DNA of 64,000 bases, taken from Auanema rhodensis. Taxonomy: Eukaryota; Animalia; Nematoda. The translations under genes and the position numbers were made by a program. Of this stretch, positions 1-14,654 are shown one piece after another. How positions within the stretch are numbered: position 1 is the first letter of the stretch; each line of letters starts with the position of its first letter. Location of the stretch: contig OZ059896.1 in the NCBI GenBank assembly GCA_964057225.1, positions 8,494,001 through 8,558,000 on the forward strand, read 5' to 3'. Below the pieces are notes generated by a model. It searched no databases and was not told the DNA's origin. It worked only from the letters and a program-made list of their open reading frames with translations.

Positions 1-2298
1 TTGTTTCGTCATAGTGATTTAGAGGACAAACATTTTTCTTCTTTAGGAGACAGAGCATGGGTTCTCTTAGCGCATAGGCAAGAATTACCGGTGTTAATAG
101 AATTTGCTTTACGGGATGAAACTGTTGAAGCTGAAGAAATAGTAGAACGAGAAAAAGTTTGTTTATTACATGAAATTTAATTTTAATGTTTTATTTCAGT
201 TGATTACTTTCACAGTTCCAACACTTCCATGGGATTCAAATAACATTAATATTAAATTGACATGTGGAAATTCAGAGATTTCAGTTCCATTCAAATACAG
301 AAAGAGGTACTTGAAAAACGCAATAACACAACAATGTTCTTTTTTTAATGTTCCCGTTTTCCAGATGCCGATCTGTTACACCGTGTGTTTCAATTGAAAA
401 TTTGATTGAGTTTGCTACAAATGGTGATACCTTGGCTTTAGTGCAACCATTCAGTTTTCTTTTGCCACAGTTAGATGGAGAAGGGAACACGTTAGCTGTA
501 GACAGAATATCTAATGTTATATTCATATCTATTGCAGAGTCCTTCATCTTGCAGCACGAAACAGTCAAAGTTTTGCTTTAAAAATCCTTTTATCAGCTGT
601 TCCCTCACCCGATAAAGAAGGTATAGAAATATCAAAAATTATAATAAATGTTATAATTCAATTAAGAAATTGTTAATATTCGAAATTCTCGAGGGTTAAC
701 TGCCTTACATTGTGCGATAAGATCTGGTGATCCGGACAGCGTACATTACTTAATAGCAAATAAGGCACATGCTTATATTTCAGATAATCATAAGAATACA
801 GTAAGTATTGATTGTTTATTTTTTTATTCTTATCTAATATAATTTAAACTTGGAATATTAGGCTGTTCACTATCTTGCTGATGCTTATAACGAAGCAATT
901 TTCAAAGAAATTCTAGAACCAGCTACAGCTGAAGATTTAAAAGTTGAAGAATTGAATGATGAAGGTTATGCAGCTCTGCATCTAGCTGTACGTAGGTGAG
1001 TATAGATGTCTATGATCTCCCGAAAACTAGAAAACTTCGTTTACAGGTTGAAACTGAGTTTGATTGAAATGCTTCTTGAAGCAGGGGCTAATCCTAATTC
1101 GTTAGACCGTAATGGACGTACTCCTTTAATACATGCTGTTCTTATGAATGATACGGACATTGTCCAGTTTCTAATAGATGTATATATATACTTGTTAAGA
1201 TATTTTCTTTTAATTTTGTGAATTTCAGCATGGTTCTGATGCGAATATAGAAAGTAATAATGGAGAGACAAGTCTATTGCTTGCGAGAGACAATGCAAAT
1301 TATGCTTTGTTGGGATATTTACTGGATGCTGGGGCTGATCCAACAGTTGCAAATCAAAAAGGAGAAACTTTGATTGATTCAGATGATTCAACTATTCAAA
1401 ACATAGTCAAAGGAGAACGGTATAAAGGAAAATAATTTGTTTACACCTTTTCATGTTTAGAATCGCTTTACCTCCGAAGGAAATTTTCACTTCATCGTCT
1501 CCTAGTGATCTCCCAGCCGTACGGGCACCTTTGTTCGGTAAGTCATGTCCGAAGAGTACGGTTGTGGATCAATATACAGTCAAACATAGTCGAATGATTA
1601 TACGAAATCCGAACCCTCAAACAAATGAAGAAGATAATATTCAGGGTACGGGTCTGTTGGCATTCGGTTTTTCATATCACAATACCTTTGAAGTTTCTAA
1701 AAAATTCATTCATTCATTGGTTTCTTAGATGAGCCTGAAGAAAGTGCCACATTAAGTGGAATTCGTGAAAATGCTCGACAGCGAGCTGCAAGACTGATGG
1801 AAGAAGTAGAGCAACTAATGAATGAACCATCAACTAGTGGCACTTCTACTGGTGCTAGGAGAGGAGCTCATAAAGGTTGTTATAACATAGATATTGAAAT
1901 CGAAAACAAAACATATCTTTCAGACGATATAGCAGGATTAGATTATTTAACAAGATTACGGTTATCGAAAGCTTTAGATCTAGATGGAAAATGGCAAAAT
2001 GTAGCAAAAGTAAAAAATTTATTTACAATTAAAAGTTTTAAAGTTTTATGCTTAGGAGCTTGGTTGTGAGCATATGATAGAATTAATCTGTATTTGTGCT
2101 ACGGATTCCAATGACAACAGTCCAACAATGATTTTTATGGATCAGTATGAAGTATGTAGAGAAGAAGCATTAACATAAATTAAAAAAGAAATCTTTCAGA
2201 ATATGCCAGATTCTAAAGTTACAAATTTACGAACAGCATTGGAACGATTACAATTAACAGAAGCTGTATCATTAATTGATGACCGATTTGTATACTAA
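1..2298 (+). CDS. ikb-1: IkB/NF-kB p105-like protein (IPT/TIG-like domain + ~6 ankyrin repeats + C-terminal death domain); 5' end lies outside the window; multi-exon
   Basis: Spliced translation gives ankyrin repeats (GNTVLHLAARN, GLTALHCAIRSG, GYAALHLAVRR, GRTPLIHAVLMN, GETSLLLA) and a death domain (LDYLTRLRLSKALDLDGKWQNVAKELG...SPTMIFMDQYE...LRTALERLQLTEAVSLIDDRF). Stop TAA at 2296-2298. Confidence 0.8.
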
Positions 2299-3119
2299 AT
2301 ATTTCCAAATTTAAAAAAAAAATCCAAATTTGGTATTAAAACGAATATTTTACTTGTAAAAGCTTTGTAGTTAAAATTTTGCAAATATTTCTCATAAAAC
2401 AAAATGTATTATAATATTTATAATATTATATTTCAGTTGAATGCTAAAAAGTTTACTATATTTCAAATGTTAACAATGAATTAATTAAATATATTAATAT
2501 ATAAATATTGTTTTTTTTTAAATTCTCAAAATTAATATTTGAAAAGTAATTGAATGAAATTAACTTGGTAAAATTGAAAATACACGAAATAAGTGCTTTG
2601 AACTCTTTAAATTAAAGAAAAAAAAAATAAAAATAAAAGGATTGTTGATAAATAAAAAGAATATAAATCAATTTTACACATCGTTGAACAAAGATTAAAA
2701 ATTAAAAAAACTCCTAACAACTACTTTGAGAGAATAGATGAAACTAATGATTATATCTTATATATACATACATATATTTGAATTATATGTACGTATATAG
2801 CATAGTTTTCATATAAACTTGTTAATATTTACACAAAACTATTTATATTTTCTTATTTTTTGTATAATATTATAAATATAAATATATGTTGTGTGTAACT
2901 AAATTAATTAATATTTGTACATACTATTCTATGCTCATTGATGATGTTCATAAAACATTTGAACTAAAAATAAGTTTTAAATTATAATTACCCTTTATAA
3001 TTTATTATTATTTGGAATGTAAATCATAGACAAAATGCTTTTTATTTTATATAATAAGAATTTTATAATGTTATCAAAGTGAGGTAAAATGAGTACCAAT
3101 GATTTGTTTTGTTTTGATT

Positions 3120-4587
3120 TTAAAATTCTGAATCCTTATAACGAGCATATACAACTTGACCAATATGGATATATCCCTAAATATATGATTATATGAATAT
3201 TATATTTATAAAGTTTGACATACTGGTTTTAGTAATCCAAGATTCACACCAAAAACTGGATCATCTTTAAACTCAGCACGCATACATCCCTCAGGAACAC
3301 CACGGTATGATCGTAACGTTTGTAGAGGCTGATTGTTCTTATCACGAATTCCAGTTTCAGGATCAACTGTTGTTAGAATACATCTAAAATCAAAGATAAA
3401 TATTGAAAAATTAATAAAAAAATAATTAATGTTCAAATGAAAATACCTTGTGCAAGGACAGCAGCATTGCAACTGTACATCTCCAATACGAAGTTCATCC
3501 CATTTATCTTCATCATAGGCTGGACACTTCTCAATGACTATATTGGGACGGAATGATTTCATTGTAAGCTAAATGTAAAAACAAATTTTTTAAAATAAAT
3601 AAATAAAATATTCAATTTTACTTTTTTCTCCAAACGTGTATTAAGGTCAGTTAAAGAGGCATCCGCAAGAGCCATGTATGGTGCAAGGTCAGAGAATGGA
3701 ACCTGAAAATTTTAATTTTTAAGCTTCTTTTTAGTTTCAACAACATCATACATTAAACTTATTTTTTGGAACAGTATTATTCATCCACCATTCCTTTTTA
3801 GGTACTAATGTACGTTCAGTATATAAATGTTCCATGTATACCACTAAACGGGTATCTAAAAATAATTTGTTTTTATGAAAATTAATTTTAAAAACAAAAA
3901 GTTTACTTGGCTCATCAATATAGTCTGATAATAATTTTGATATCTCTTCACCACAATCAAGACCATCTTGCTTTTTCTTCTCAAACAATCTTGAAAATTT
4001 AAATTTTTTTCTCTAAAATGATACAAATAAAAACTTACGTTGTTCTGATAACTTTATTCTCATTAGTCACTATATTTAGATCAATAACGCAAGTTTTTCC
4101 ATCGGGGAATTTAACTATCAGAGTATTGTCCTTCATTTCTGATTCGATGAGAATCATTTTGGGTTTTTGTCTTGCTGTGTAGAATCTTCAAAGAATATCT
4201 TAAGAAACTAAGCTACTATCCACATCATTACAATCCCGTTTCCCCATTAATAATCTGGAAGAACCTATCTCTCATGCCACCACATTCAACTCCGTATTTT
4301 CCGCAATATAAAGAAAATACCTAGATATAAACAATTCAAGCAGAAACAAATATTAAATATTCTACCTGTTTGGATCTGCAGGATTTTATTGGATATATAT
4401 TCAGCTCTTTGATTATACCAATTGGTACAAAATCTCTGCGTTTTGAAGATTTATACAGCTTATAACCATATTTAGTCACCTGATTAGGAAATTAAATTTA
4501 AAAAAAAAGGAAAAACGTTACATTATAAATGACGAATCCTACTCCAATTGAGAGGGCGAAAGCTTTTTTGTCATCAATCCAAGCCAT
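3120..4587 (-). CDS. MOSC-domain molybdenum cofactor protein (mARC-like)
   Basis: N-terminal hydrophobic anchor (MAWIDDKKAFALSIGVGFVIYN), IYPIKSC, DRFFQII, DLAPYM, FRPNIVIEKCPAYDEDKW, PCTRCILTTVDPETG and PVFGVN are typical MOSC_N/MOSC motifs. Canonical short introns. Confidence 0.92.
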
Positions 4588-10629: not shown

Positions 10630-11580
10630 ATGGATCTTGAGCATCGTATTAAGGCTTACCGCTTCGTCGCCTATTCGGCTGTGACCTTCTCTGTGGTCGC
10701 AGTCCTTTCGGTCTGCGTCACTCTTCCCATGGTCTACAACTATGTTCACCATGTCAAGAGATCCATGCACAACGAAATCAACTTCTGCAAGGGATCCGCC
10801 AAGGATATCTGGTCCGAGGTTAACCATTTGAAGAACATGCCAGCCGGAAACAGAACTGCCCGTCAAGCCGGTTACGGAGATGCCGGAGTTAGCGGAGGAT
10901 CCGGAACTGCTGGAGGATGTGATGCTTGCTGTCTCCCAGGAGCCGCTGGACCAGCTGGTACCCCAGGAAAGCCAGGAAGACCAGGAAAGCCAGGAGCTCC
11001 AGGACTCCCAGGAAACCCAGGACGTCCACCTCAGCAACCATGTGACCCAATCACTCCACCACCATGCAAGCCATGCCCAGCTGGACCACCAGGACCACCA
11101 GGACAGCCAGGACCTTCCGGAGATGCTGGACTTCCAGGACAACCAGGACAACCAGGACAAGACGCTGCCCCAGGACAGCCAGGACCAAAGGGAGCCCCAG
11201 GACCAGCCGGAAACCCAGGAGCCCCAGGAGCCCCAGGACAACCAGGACAAGACGCTCCATCCGAGCCAATCCTCCCAGGAGAGCCAGGACCACAAGGAGC
11301 TCCAGGACCACAAGGACCACCAGGACAACCAGGACAACCAGGACAAGACGGAGCTCCAGGTAAATAACAATCCTTTATAACAAATCTTATTCACATATCA
11401 ATTGTAGGACAAGCTGGACCAAAGGGACCAAACGGACAACCTGGACAACCAGGAGCCGACGGAAACCCAGGAGCCCCAGGACCAGCTGGACCACCAGGAG
11501 GACCAGGAGAGAAGGGTATCTGCCCCAAGTACTGCGCCATCGACGGAGGTGTCTTCTTCGAGGACGGAACACGCCGTTAA
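10630..11580 (+). CDS. Nematode cuticle collagen (one intron, 11360-11407)
   Basis: Col_cuticle_N region [35 protein letters not shown] cleavage site, CDACC, Gly-X-Y repeats, C-terminus [24 protein letters not shown]. Confidence 0.97.
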
Positions 11581-13576: not shown

Positions 13577-14654
13577 TTAACGGCGTGTTCCGTCCTCGAA
13601 GAAGACACCTCCGTCGATGGCGCAGTACTTGGGGCAGATTCCCTTCTCTCCTGGTCCTCCTGGGTTTCCAGCTGGTCCTGGAGCTCCTGGGTTTCCGTCT
13701 GGTCCTGGTTGTCCTGGTTGTCCGTTTGGTCCCTTTGGTCCAGCTTGTCCTATAAGGTTTTTATATATGAATAAAGATTGTGAGGATTTAATGTTTTACC
13801 TGGAGTTCCATCCATTCCTGGTTGTCCTGGTTGTCCTGGAGTTCCTGGTGGTCCTTGTGGTCCTGGGGCTCCTGGTGGTCCTGGTTGTGGGTACTCAGAT
13901 GGAGCGTCTTGTCCTGGTTGTCCTGGCATTCCTGGGGCTCCCATCTTTCCTGGGTTTCCTGGAGCTCCCTTTGGTCCTGGTGGTCCTGGGCTTGGGTATC
14001 CGGTGGTTTGTCCTGGGAGTCCTGGAAGTCCAGCATCTCCTGGTTGTCCTGGCTGTCCTGGTGGTCCTGGTGGTCCTGGTGGGCATGGCTTGCATGGTGG
14101 TGGAGTGATCTCGTTGCATGGTTGCTGAGGTGGACGTCCTGGGTTTCCTGGGAGTCCTGGAGCTCCTGGTCTTCCTGGGTTTCCTGGCTTTCCTGGGGTA
14201 CCAGCTGGTCCAGCGGCTCCTGGAAGACAGCAAGCATTGCAGTCTCCTGGGCGAGTTCCGTAGTTGTTTCCTCCATTAACTCCGCTATCATATCCATCAT
14301 ATCCGGCTTGACGAGCAGTTCTGTTTCCGGCTGGTCCAGATTTCAAGTGGCTGACTTCAGACCAGATATCTTTGGCAGATGACTGAAATAAATTAAAATT
14401 ATTAAATATAATAAATGAAATAAGAATAAATTAGTTGATGTATGTGAATAATAATAGTTTGAATAAGAATTGTAAAATTATTTTACCTTGCAGAAGTTGA
14501 TTTCGTTGTGCATGGATCTCTTGACATGGTGAACATAGTTGTAGACCATGGGAAGAGTGACGCAGACCGAAAGGACTGCGACCACGGAGAAAGCAACAGC
14601 CGAATAGGCTACAAAGCGATAAGCTTTGATACGATGGATGAGTTCGGATTCCAT
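13577..14654 (-). CDS. Nematode cuticle collagen, paralogue of the 10630 gene (introns 14383-14486 and ~13750-13798)
   Basis: [20 protein letters not shown]..., RTAR, CNACC, Gly-X-Y repeats and the same C-terminus [21 protein letters not shown]. Confidence 0.97.

What the first reader, a model, noticed from the sequence alone, without database searches (positions are those of the whole stretch)
47..2298. IkB-like gene with NF-kB p105/p100 architecture: IPT domain, basic NLS, ankyrins and death domain
Seen in sequence: upstream of the ankyrins, the spliced exons 47-156 and 200-306 read GDRAWVLL..RQELPVLIEF...EKLITFTVPTLP...INIKLTCG.SEISVPFKY, followed by a basic KYRKRCR. Recalled from memory: this aligns block by block with the Rel-family IPT/dimerisation domain (GGDEIYLL...IEVRF...AIVFKTPPY...VFVQL...SEPKPFLY) and the NLS that follows it. 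The pre-ankyrin segment LIEFATNGDTLAL...LL.QLDGEGNTVLHLA resembles p105 LFDYAVTGDVKML...LT.VQDENGDSVLHLA, and death-domain SPTMIFMDQYE resembles p105 APSKTLMDNYE. Established: C. elegans is regarded as lacking NF-kB while keeping ikb-1. Inference: this gene descends from a p105/Relish-type NF-kB precursor and retains at least the C-terminal half of the Rel homology region. The glycine-rich processing region is absent (only ~10 residues link IPT to the pre-ankyrin helix). The window cuts off the N-terminus, so an RHD DNA-binding half could lie upstream.
Basis: partly seen in the sequence, partly recalled or inferred. Interest (0 to 1): 0.85.

Follow-up and report, generated by a model that had tools for sequence, protein, structure and literature searches.

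The report
Nematode IkB-like gene, IPT origin untested
This is a real, expressed nematode gene for an IkB-type ankyrin-repeat protein with a probable death domain at its end, but whether its short front part is a leftover of the NF-kB dimerisation (IPT) domain could not be tested here and remains an attractive lead.

Summary
The sequence observation holds. All 13 exons (47-2298, + strand) and all 12 GT..AG introns are confirmed base for base by spliced transcript contigs in four public runs.

Pfam confirms ankyrin repeats on single exons. The only strongly basic patch in the 542 residues, KYRKRCR, lies between the front part and the ankyrins. There is no glycine-rich region and no DSGxxS degron.

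The transcript contigs carry only 154-159 nt upstream of position 46, with an in-frame ATG 27 nt upstream. A Rel DNA-binding half is therefore unlikely, though contigs cannot prove a start.

The key claim, an IPT remnant, was not tested. The joined exon 1+2 peptide, the joined death-domain peptide and the spliced protein have no reference, so they were left out of HMM, fold and homologue searches. Single-exon searches are blank and uninformative.

- Language-model neighbours are Ig-like/TIG for exon 2 and Death for the last exon.
- Intron phases are 1 then 0, as reported for NF-kB IPT domains.

No orthologue could be fetched. An overlapping window of this scan noted the same gene (s1-393751).

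The parts
47..156 (+). Exon 1 of the window (36 codons, entered in phase 1). First half of the IPT-like front part (GDRAWVLLAHRQELPVLIEF... then an acidic stretch).
   Evidence: Joints 46/47 and 156/200 in spliced contigs; translation. Pfam, PDB and Atlas give nothing for it alone.
200..306 (+). Exon 2. Second half of the IPT-like part (LITFTVPTLP...INIKLTCG...SEISVPFKY) and the start of the basic patch KYRKR.
   Evidence: Joints; translation. Pfam and PDB blank. Atlas nearest named clusters are DUF4469 (0.82) and TIG (0.75), all ten best sharing a family or clan; this is below the tool's own significance level.
365..490 (+). Exon 3. End of the basic patch (CR), a pre-ankyrin segment (IENLIEFATNGDTLAL) and the start of ankyrin repeat 1 (DGEGNT).
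   Evidence: Joints; translation. It holds the only window of 10 residues with 5 or more K/R in the protein. PDB blank.
538..1419 (+). Exons 4-8 (538-620, 667-800, 862-995, 1047-1179, 1229-1419). Ankyrin repeat domain of about 6 repeats plus a partial 7th.
   Evidence: Pfam Ank, Ank_2, Ank_4 and Ank_5 above cut-off on exons 5 and 7, weaker on exons 4, 6 and 8. PDB ankyrin hits down to 2e-20. All joints.
1461..1645 (+). Exon 9, a Ser/Pro-rich linker. An alternative donor at 1537 removes 36 codons in frame (GKSCPKS...EEDNIQ).
   Evidence: Two joints, 1537->1729 and 1645->1729, each in all four runs. Frame checked. No Pfam family.
1729..1875 (+). Exon 10, an acidic/helical linker. The intron after it (1876-1923, 48 nt) is in frame and stop-free.
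1924..2298 (+). Exons 11-13 (1924-2009, 2056-2151, 2200-2298 including the stop). C-terminal 93 residues, death-domain-like.
   Evidence: Joints. Atlas nearest named cluster for the last exon is 'Death domain-containing protein', PF00531 in 78% of members, score 0.77, all ten best in one family or clan. Single-exon Pfam and PDB searches blank.
2299..2445 (+). 3' untranslated region.
   Evidence: Transcript contigs end at 2414-2445. ATTAAA at 2335.

Best explanation
The window holds all but the first exon(s) of an expressed nematode gene for an IkB-family protein. It is most likely the counterpart of C. elegans IKB-1. From the front, the order of parts is:
- a short (about 70-80 residue), sheet-former-rich module;
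- one basic patch (KYRKRCR);
- six to seven ankyrin repeats;
- a roughly 110-residue Ser/Pro/acidic linker that comes in two in-frame splice forms;
- a C-terminal death-domain-like module.

This is the layout of the C-terminal half of NF-kB p105/p100/Relish (the IkB-gamma type), without the DNA-binding Rel domain.

Inferred mechanism: the ankyrin stack binds a partner protein and the death-like domain docks onto other death-fold signalling proteins. The protein is not cut to a p50-like product, because it has no glycine-rich stop signal. It is not an IKK/beta-TrCP substrate of the classical kind, because it has no DSGxxS.

Shown here: gene structure, expression, ankyrin repeats, basic patch, and the absence of GRR and DSGxxS. 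Inferred: the death fold, IKB-1 orthology, the binding partners, and descent from a p105/Relish-type gene.
For: - Gene model with 12 confirmed introns and two isoforms.
- Pfam ankyrin hits above cut-off on single exons, and PDB ankyrin hits.
- A single basic patch at residues 65-74 of the fragment, no G-rich run, no DSGxxS.
- The last exon's nearest named Atlas cluster is a Death-domain family.
- Fragment of 542 aa plus 9-53 upstream codons gives about 62-67 kDa. C. elegans IKB-1 is 66.4 kDa and, unlike NFKI-1, lacks DSGxxS (PMC7527347).
- Host is a nematode, with clade V species as the closest matches for its collagen: cuticle collagen genes in the window, best collagen hits in Strongylus, Nippostrongylus, Heterorhabditis, Caenorhabditis, Steinernema.
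- Relish homologues persist in Nematomorpha and Priapulida (PMC7056985), so a Relish-type ancestor gene is plausible.
Against: - No orthologue (C. elegans IKB-1 included) and no p105/Relish/IkB sequence could be fetched, so orthology and family placement rest on architecture and size.
- The death domain has no HMM or fold support here. The Atlas score of 0.77 is below the tool's level for more than a lead.
- PDB best hits of the ankyrin exons are generic ankyrins and DARPins, not IkB or NF-kB chains.
- The N-terminus is outside the window.
Confidence: 0.7

Rival explanations
1. The gene is a 'decapitated' p105/Relish: the 47-306 product is a true remnant of the Rel-homology IPT/dimerisation domain, followed by the ancestral NLS. 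Nematodes would then have kept everything of NF-kB except the DNA-binding half.
For: - The module sits where IPT and NLS sit in p105, directly before the pre-ankyrin segment, and carries the protein's only basic patch.
- The region is rich in sheet-forming residues. By eye I read five hydrophobic strand-like runs in it (AWVLLA, VLIEFAL, LITFTV, INIKL, SVPFKY).
- Atlas neighbours of exon 2 are Ig-like/TIG clusters, and the same method gives 'Death' for the last exon.
- The two introns in the region have phases 1 and 0, the phases reported for the two IPT introns of NF-kB-subfamily genes (PMC3517549; phases).
- From my own memory, unchecked: strand spacing resembles p50/p65 (..EIYLLCDKVQKDDIQIRF.. 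/ ..AIVFKTP.. / ..SEPKPFLY).
Against: - No statistical test was possible.
- Exon-wise Pfam (RHD_dimer, TIG) and PDB searches give nothing.
- Exon 1 has no informative Atlas neighbour.
- The Atlas scores (0.75-0.84) and the 'all ten in one clan' result are reached by about a third of shuffled peptides, by the tool's own figures.
- Matching two intron phases has about a 1 in 9 chance, and intron positions were not compared.
- By eye, identity to Rel IPT domains is only about 20%.
Confidence: 0.4
2. It is a complete NF-kB p105/Relish gene whose Rel DNA-binding domain lies in exons upstream of the window.
For: The window cuts the gene. Contigs cannot prove a transcript start (tool text).
Against: - In all four runs the spliced contig stops 154-159 nt upstream of position 46, enough for at most 53 codons, while a Rel N-terminal domain needs about 180 or more.
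- There is an in-frame ATG 27 nt upstream.
- The overlapping window's reader called the gene decapitated (s1-393751).
- No scan note in this genome holds the word 'Rel'.
- There is no glycine-rich processing signal.
Confidence: 0.05
3. It is an ankyrin-repeat plus death-domain protein unrelated to the NF-kB/IkB lineage (ANKDD1-like or a short ankyrin/DAPK relative). The front part is a lineage-specific extension whose likeness to IPT is chance.
For: The ankyrin exons hit generic ankyrins best in PDB. No family-specific signal was obtained for any non-ankyrin part.
Against: - There are 6-7 repeats only, and no ZU5/UPA or kinase part in the 542 residues.
- Size and lack of DSGxxS fit IKB-1.
- From memory: the repeat 1-2 junction (..EEIVNIRN..) and the C-terminal ..MDQYE.. 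resemble p105.
Confidence: 0.12

Closest known systems
C. elegans IKB-1 (C04F12.3), one of two nematode IkB homologues
   Same: It is a nematode protein of about 66 kDa with ankyrin repeats and no DSGxxS degron, in an animal group without Rel proteins (PMC7527347).
   Different: The papers found describe IKB-1 only as an ankyrin-repeat IkB/BCL3 homologue, with no mention of a death domain or an IPT-like N-terminus.
IkB-gamma / C-terminal half of NF-kB1 p105 (also p100, and Relish of non-dipteran arthropods)
   Same: The order is basic patch, ankyrin repeat domain, linker, C-terminal death(-like) domain. It stands alone without a DNA-binding domain, as IkB-gamma does (PMC3553144).
   Different: There is no glycine-rich region and no DSGxxS-type phospho-degron. 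It is a separate gene rather than an internal product. It has about 70-80 extra residues in front of the basic patch, of untested fold.
Classical IkBs (IkB-alpha/beta/epsilon, Cactus, BCL3)
   Same: A stack of six to seven ankyrin repeats.
   Different: Classical IkBs have no death domain (from my own knowledge, not tested here). IkB-alpha, -beta, -epsilon and Cactus carry an N-terminal DSGxxS, which is absent here.
Rel homology region, IPT/dimerisation domain (Pfam RHD_dimer, E-set clan)
   Same: Position before the NLS and ankyrins. Strand-like hydrophobic pattern, and intron phases 1,0. Weak Ig-like/TIG language-model neighbours.
   Different: No HMM or fold match was obtained. The first strands would have to lie in the unseen upstream exon or be missing.

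Membership tests
IkB family | Domain of about 5-8 ankyrin repeats | tested here: met
   Pfam Ank, Ank_2, Ank_4 and Ank_5 above cut-off on exons 5 and 7, weaker on exons 4, 6 and 8. About 6-7 repeats read from the translation.
IkB family (classical, signal-degraded) | DSGxxS IKK/beta-TrCP degron | tested here: not met
   The pattern search finds none in the 542 residues. The unseen 9-53 N-terminal residues are not covered.
NF-kB p105/p100/Relish class | N-terminal Rel DNA-binding domain (RHD_DNA_bind) | tested here: inconclusive
   It would lie outside the window. Spliced contigs of four runs stop 154-159 nt upstream of position 46, with an in-frame ATG at -27 (nt context). That leaves room for at most 53 codons, but contigs cannot prove a start.
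NF-kB p105/p100/Relish class | IPT/dimerisation domain (RHD_dimer) | tested here: inconclusive
   Exon-wise Pfam and PDB searches are blank. There are weak Atlas TIG/Ig-like neighbours for exon 2 only. The joined peptide has no reference, so the HMM scan and fold were left out.
NF-kB p105/p100/Relish class | Basic nuclear localisation signal after the IPT | tested here: met
   KYRKRCR is the only window of 10 residues with 5 or more K/R. Its function as an NLS was not tested.
NF-kB p105/p100 class | Glycine-rich region (processing stop signal) | tested here: not met
   No G-run and 4% Gly overall. About 10 residues separate the basic patch from the pre-ankyrin segment.
NF-kB p105/p100/Relish class | C-terminal death domain | tested here: inconclusive
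   The three exons scanned singly give no Pfam or PDB hit. The Atlas nearest named cluster of the last exon is a Death family at 0.77. The joined 93-residue peptide has no reference.
C. elegans IKB-1 orthologue group | Reciprocal best sequence match to IKB-1 | not testable with these tools
   All homologue searches are limited to 0.55-1.75 times the length of a stop-free reference (122 aa at most here), and they returned no relative. This species' proteome is not in the collection.
Ankyrin / UNC-44 / ANKDD1-type ankyrin-death proteins | Long repeat arrays with ZU5-UPA before the death domain | tested here: not met
   There are only 6-7 repeats. The 111-residue linker has no Pfam family.

The most novel reading that the evidence does not exclude
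Nematodes did not lose NF-kB outright. The ikb-1 lineage would be a Relish/p105-type gene that lost only its DNA-binding half and kept a dimerisation-competent IPT remnant, the NLS, the ankyrin inhibitor domain and the death domain. IKB-1 would then be a self-contained, possibly self-masking and dimerising relic of NF-kB.
Probability: 0.4. Interest if true: 0.7.

Novelty: new member of a known kind. Interest (0 to 1): 0.45.

Why it matters
C. elegans and its relatives are the textbook case of animals without NF-kB that still keep IkB-like genes. Why those genes persist is an open question (PMC7527347).

If the front of this protein is a Rel dimerisation-domain remnant and its end a p105-type death domain, the nematode IkB would be the truncated descendant of the NF-kB precursor itself. 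That would date and describe how the pathway was dismantled. It would also suggest testable activities for IKB-1: self-association through the IPT remnant, nuclear import through the basic patch, and death-fold docking.

As it stands, the solid result is ordinary: a well-supported gene model and two isoforms of an IkB-type gene.

Tried and rejected
**Representative search with exon 8.** It was swamped by giant multi-repeat ankyrin proteins. None of the 150 returned proteins matches the non-ankyrin parts, and five checked by Pfam have no Death or TIG domain.

**The search for homologous proteins**
- The only multi-exon stop-free reference (exon 10, in-frame intron 10, exon 11; 112 aa) gave no hit.
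- The neighbouring collagen was used to find this species' annotated genome. The best hit was 94% identical, so the species is not in the collection.
- A two-row alignment of a 310-aa antisense-collagen carrier plus exon 8 was made only to lift the length window to 170-542 aa. It returned four antisense-collagen artefacts. Stacked multi-exon alignments (A1-A3) were judged unusable.

**The look-up of encoding contigs**
- ORF-type references from the window are not on record.
- Synteny through collagen hits in Pristionchus mayeri and Caenorhabditis auriculariae shows no ankyrin/death neighbour.

**Metagenome scans**
- The exon 3 stretch found nothing.
- Exon 8 found 41 generic ankyrin loci, none matching the N- or C-terminal parts.

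**Single-piece searches**
- Pfam and PDB searches of every non-ankyrin exon are blank. This is uninformative at 28-48 residues.

**Other checks**
- There is no second copy of the gene in the window.

**Left out because the sequence has no reference.** I did not type, split or encode these:
- the joined exon 1+2 peptide (72 aa, or 82 with the upstream codons);
- the joined exons 11-13 peptide (93 aa);
- the 542-aa spliced protein.

Therefore no joined Pfam scan, no PDB profile search, no structure prediction or fold search, and no full-length homologue search were run.

Full report
**What is there.** Reading 1-3000 and searching all GT/AG combinations that keep one frame open gives a 13-exon model on the + strand:
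- 47-156, 200-306, 365-490, 538-620, 667-800, 862-995, 1047-1179;
- 1229-1419, 1461-1645, 1729-1875, 1924-2009, 2056-2151, 2200-2298 (stop).

Introns are 41-83 nt with nematode-type TTTCAG-like acceptors. The fragment encodes 542 residues.

**Expression and splicing.** Four public runs of one study hold 55% of the sampled words of 1-2400, as expected for spliced RNA.
- Their contigs show every one of the 12 predicted joints with GT..AG ends and no sequence differences.
- They also show a second donor at 1537 joined to 1729. This removes 36 codons in frame (GKSCPKS...EEDNIQ), so there are two isoforms that differ in the linker.
- Contigs end at 2414-2445, which marks the 3' UTR.

**The 5' end.**
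- Upstream of position 46 the contig continues for 159, 154, 159 and 159 letters that do not lie in the window.
- The last 30 of these read, in frame, ..E E M G A S G A A P before G-D-R-A-W. An ATG therefore lies 27 nt upstream, and at most 53 more codons are present in the contig.
- The tool warns that contigs cannot show a transcript start. This is suggestive, not proof, that no Rel DNA-binding domain (about 180 or more residues) precedes.
- It agrees with the title of the scan's note on the overlapping window ('decapitated', s1-393751).
- Another gene's snoRNA-bearing intron is noted 6.5 kb upstream (s1-393697).

**Domains that could be tested.**
- Scanned exon by exon, Pfam gives ankyrin families above cut-off for exons 5 and 7, and weaker hits for exons 4, 6 and 8. 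PDB chains matched by exon 5 are generic ankyrins and DARPins.
- The translation shows six repeats and a partial seventh.
- The only stretch with 5 or more K/R in ten residues is VPFKYRKRCRSV, at the exon 2/3 junction. There is no DSGxxS and no glycine run, and Gly is 4%.
- The 111-residue linker has no family.

**What could not be tested, and why.**
- The tools here take no protein read through a stop by reference.
- Every domain of interest is split over 28-36-residue exons. Intron 10 is the only in-frame, stop-free intron.
- The following were therefore not handed to any search, scan or fold tool: the joined exon 1+2 peptide, the joined exons 11-13 peptide and the spliced protein.
- The pieces searched apart give nothing in Pfam or PDB. 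That is what one expects even for true, divergent domains.

**Attempts to obtain an orthologue or a spliced reference.** All failed. The details are in Tried and rejected.
- The collagen neighbour shows that the host is a nematode. Its best matches are Rhabditina such as Strongylus, Nippostrongylus, Heterorhabditis, Caenorhabditis auriculariae, Steinernema and Pristionchus.
- No hit exceeds 94% identity, so this species' proteins are not in the collection.

**Leads on the two untested domains.** The language-model Atlas search on single exons gave the following.
- The last exon's only named neighbour is a chordate 'Death domain-containing protein' cluster (PF00531 in 78% of members, score 0.77). 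All ten best hits share one family or clan, and recognition is 2439.
- Exon 2's neighbours are DUF4469 (0.82) and TIG (0.75), again with all ten best sharing a family or clan.
- Exon 1 has no informative neighbour.
- By the tool's own calibration, scores under 0.9 are leads only, and a third of shuffled peptides reach such values.

A second lead comes from gene structure. A published comparison states that the IPT domain of NF-kB-subfamily genes has two introns of phases 1 and 0 (PMC3517549). The two introns in the IPT-like part here are phase 1 (before position 47) and phase 0 (156/200). Positions could not be compared, and the chance of matching two phases is about 1 in 9.

From my own memory, unchecked, three resemblances are real to the eye at roughly 20% identity:
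- the spacing of the hydrophobic runs AWVLLA / VLIEFAL / LITFTVP / INIKL / SEISVPFKY, compared with p50 and p65 strands;
- the ..IVNIRN.. junction of repeats 1 and 2;
- the C-terminal ..MDQYE...EAVSLID.. compared with p105.

**Literature.**
- C. elegans lacks Rel proteins and has two IkB homologues. IKB-1 is 66.4 kDa, lacks DSGxxS, and has BCL3 as its best human BLAST hit. NFKI-1 is the other. Both are implicated in chromatin regulation (PMC7527347).
- The size here (542 aa plus 9-53 more, about 62-67 kDa) and the missing degron fit IKB-1.
- Relish homologues are reported in Paragordius (Nematomorpha) and Priapulus (PMC7056985). A Relish-type gene was therefore probably present in the ancestor of nematodes.
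- IkB-gamma is the free C-terminal part of p105 (PMC3553144) and is the closest described architecture.
- No paper in the library links ikb-1 to NFKB1 or Relish, or mentions a death or IPT domain in it. The library is incomplete, so this is not proof of novelty.

**Verdict.**
- The best-supported reading (0.7) is an expressed IKB-1-type IkB gene with the layout of the C-terminal half of p105/Relish.
- That its front part is a genuine IPT remnant is plausible (about 0.4) but untested.
- A complete NF-kB with an upstream Rel domain is unlikely (about 0.05).
- The decisive tests are simple for anyone who can submit the spliced protein. They are listed under next steps.

Noticed in passing
window 1461-1729: Alternative 5' splice site inside the linker exon (donor at 1537 versus 1645, same acceptor at 1729). 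It gives two in-frame isoforms differing by 36 residues between the ankyrin and death-like domains. Both forms are seen in all four runs.
   Followed up: partly
window 1876-1923: Intron 10 is 48 nt, in frame and free of stops. Its retention would insert 16 residues just before the death-like domain. Only the spliced joint across it is listed for the contigs.
   Followed up: no
upstream of window position 46 (transcript contig only): The upstream exon ends ...GAAGAG ATG GGT GCT AGC GGA GCA GCA CCT G. If this ATG is the start, the protein begins MGASGAAPG, which fits the simple N-myristoylation pattern G-{EDRKHPFYW}-x(2)-[STAGCN]-{P}. This is speculative.
   Followed up: no
window 3206-3562 (- strand): An exon of a MOSC-domain gene (Pfam MOSC 1.1e-08) lies tail to tail with the IkB-like gene, about 760 nt from its 3' end.
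   Followed up: partly
window 10630-11367 (+) and 13750-14346 (-): Two similar cuticle collagen genes lie in convergent (tail-to-tail) orientation about 2.4 kb apart (Col_cuticle_N and Collagen Pfam hits). Their antisense strands carry long W/S-rich open frames. Similar antisense frames are deposited as 'hypothetical proteins' in public collections (for example a Pristionchus mayeri entry, P0226).
   Followed up: partly
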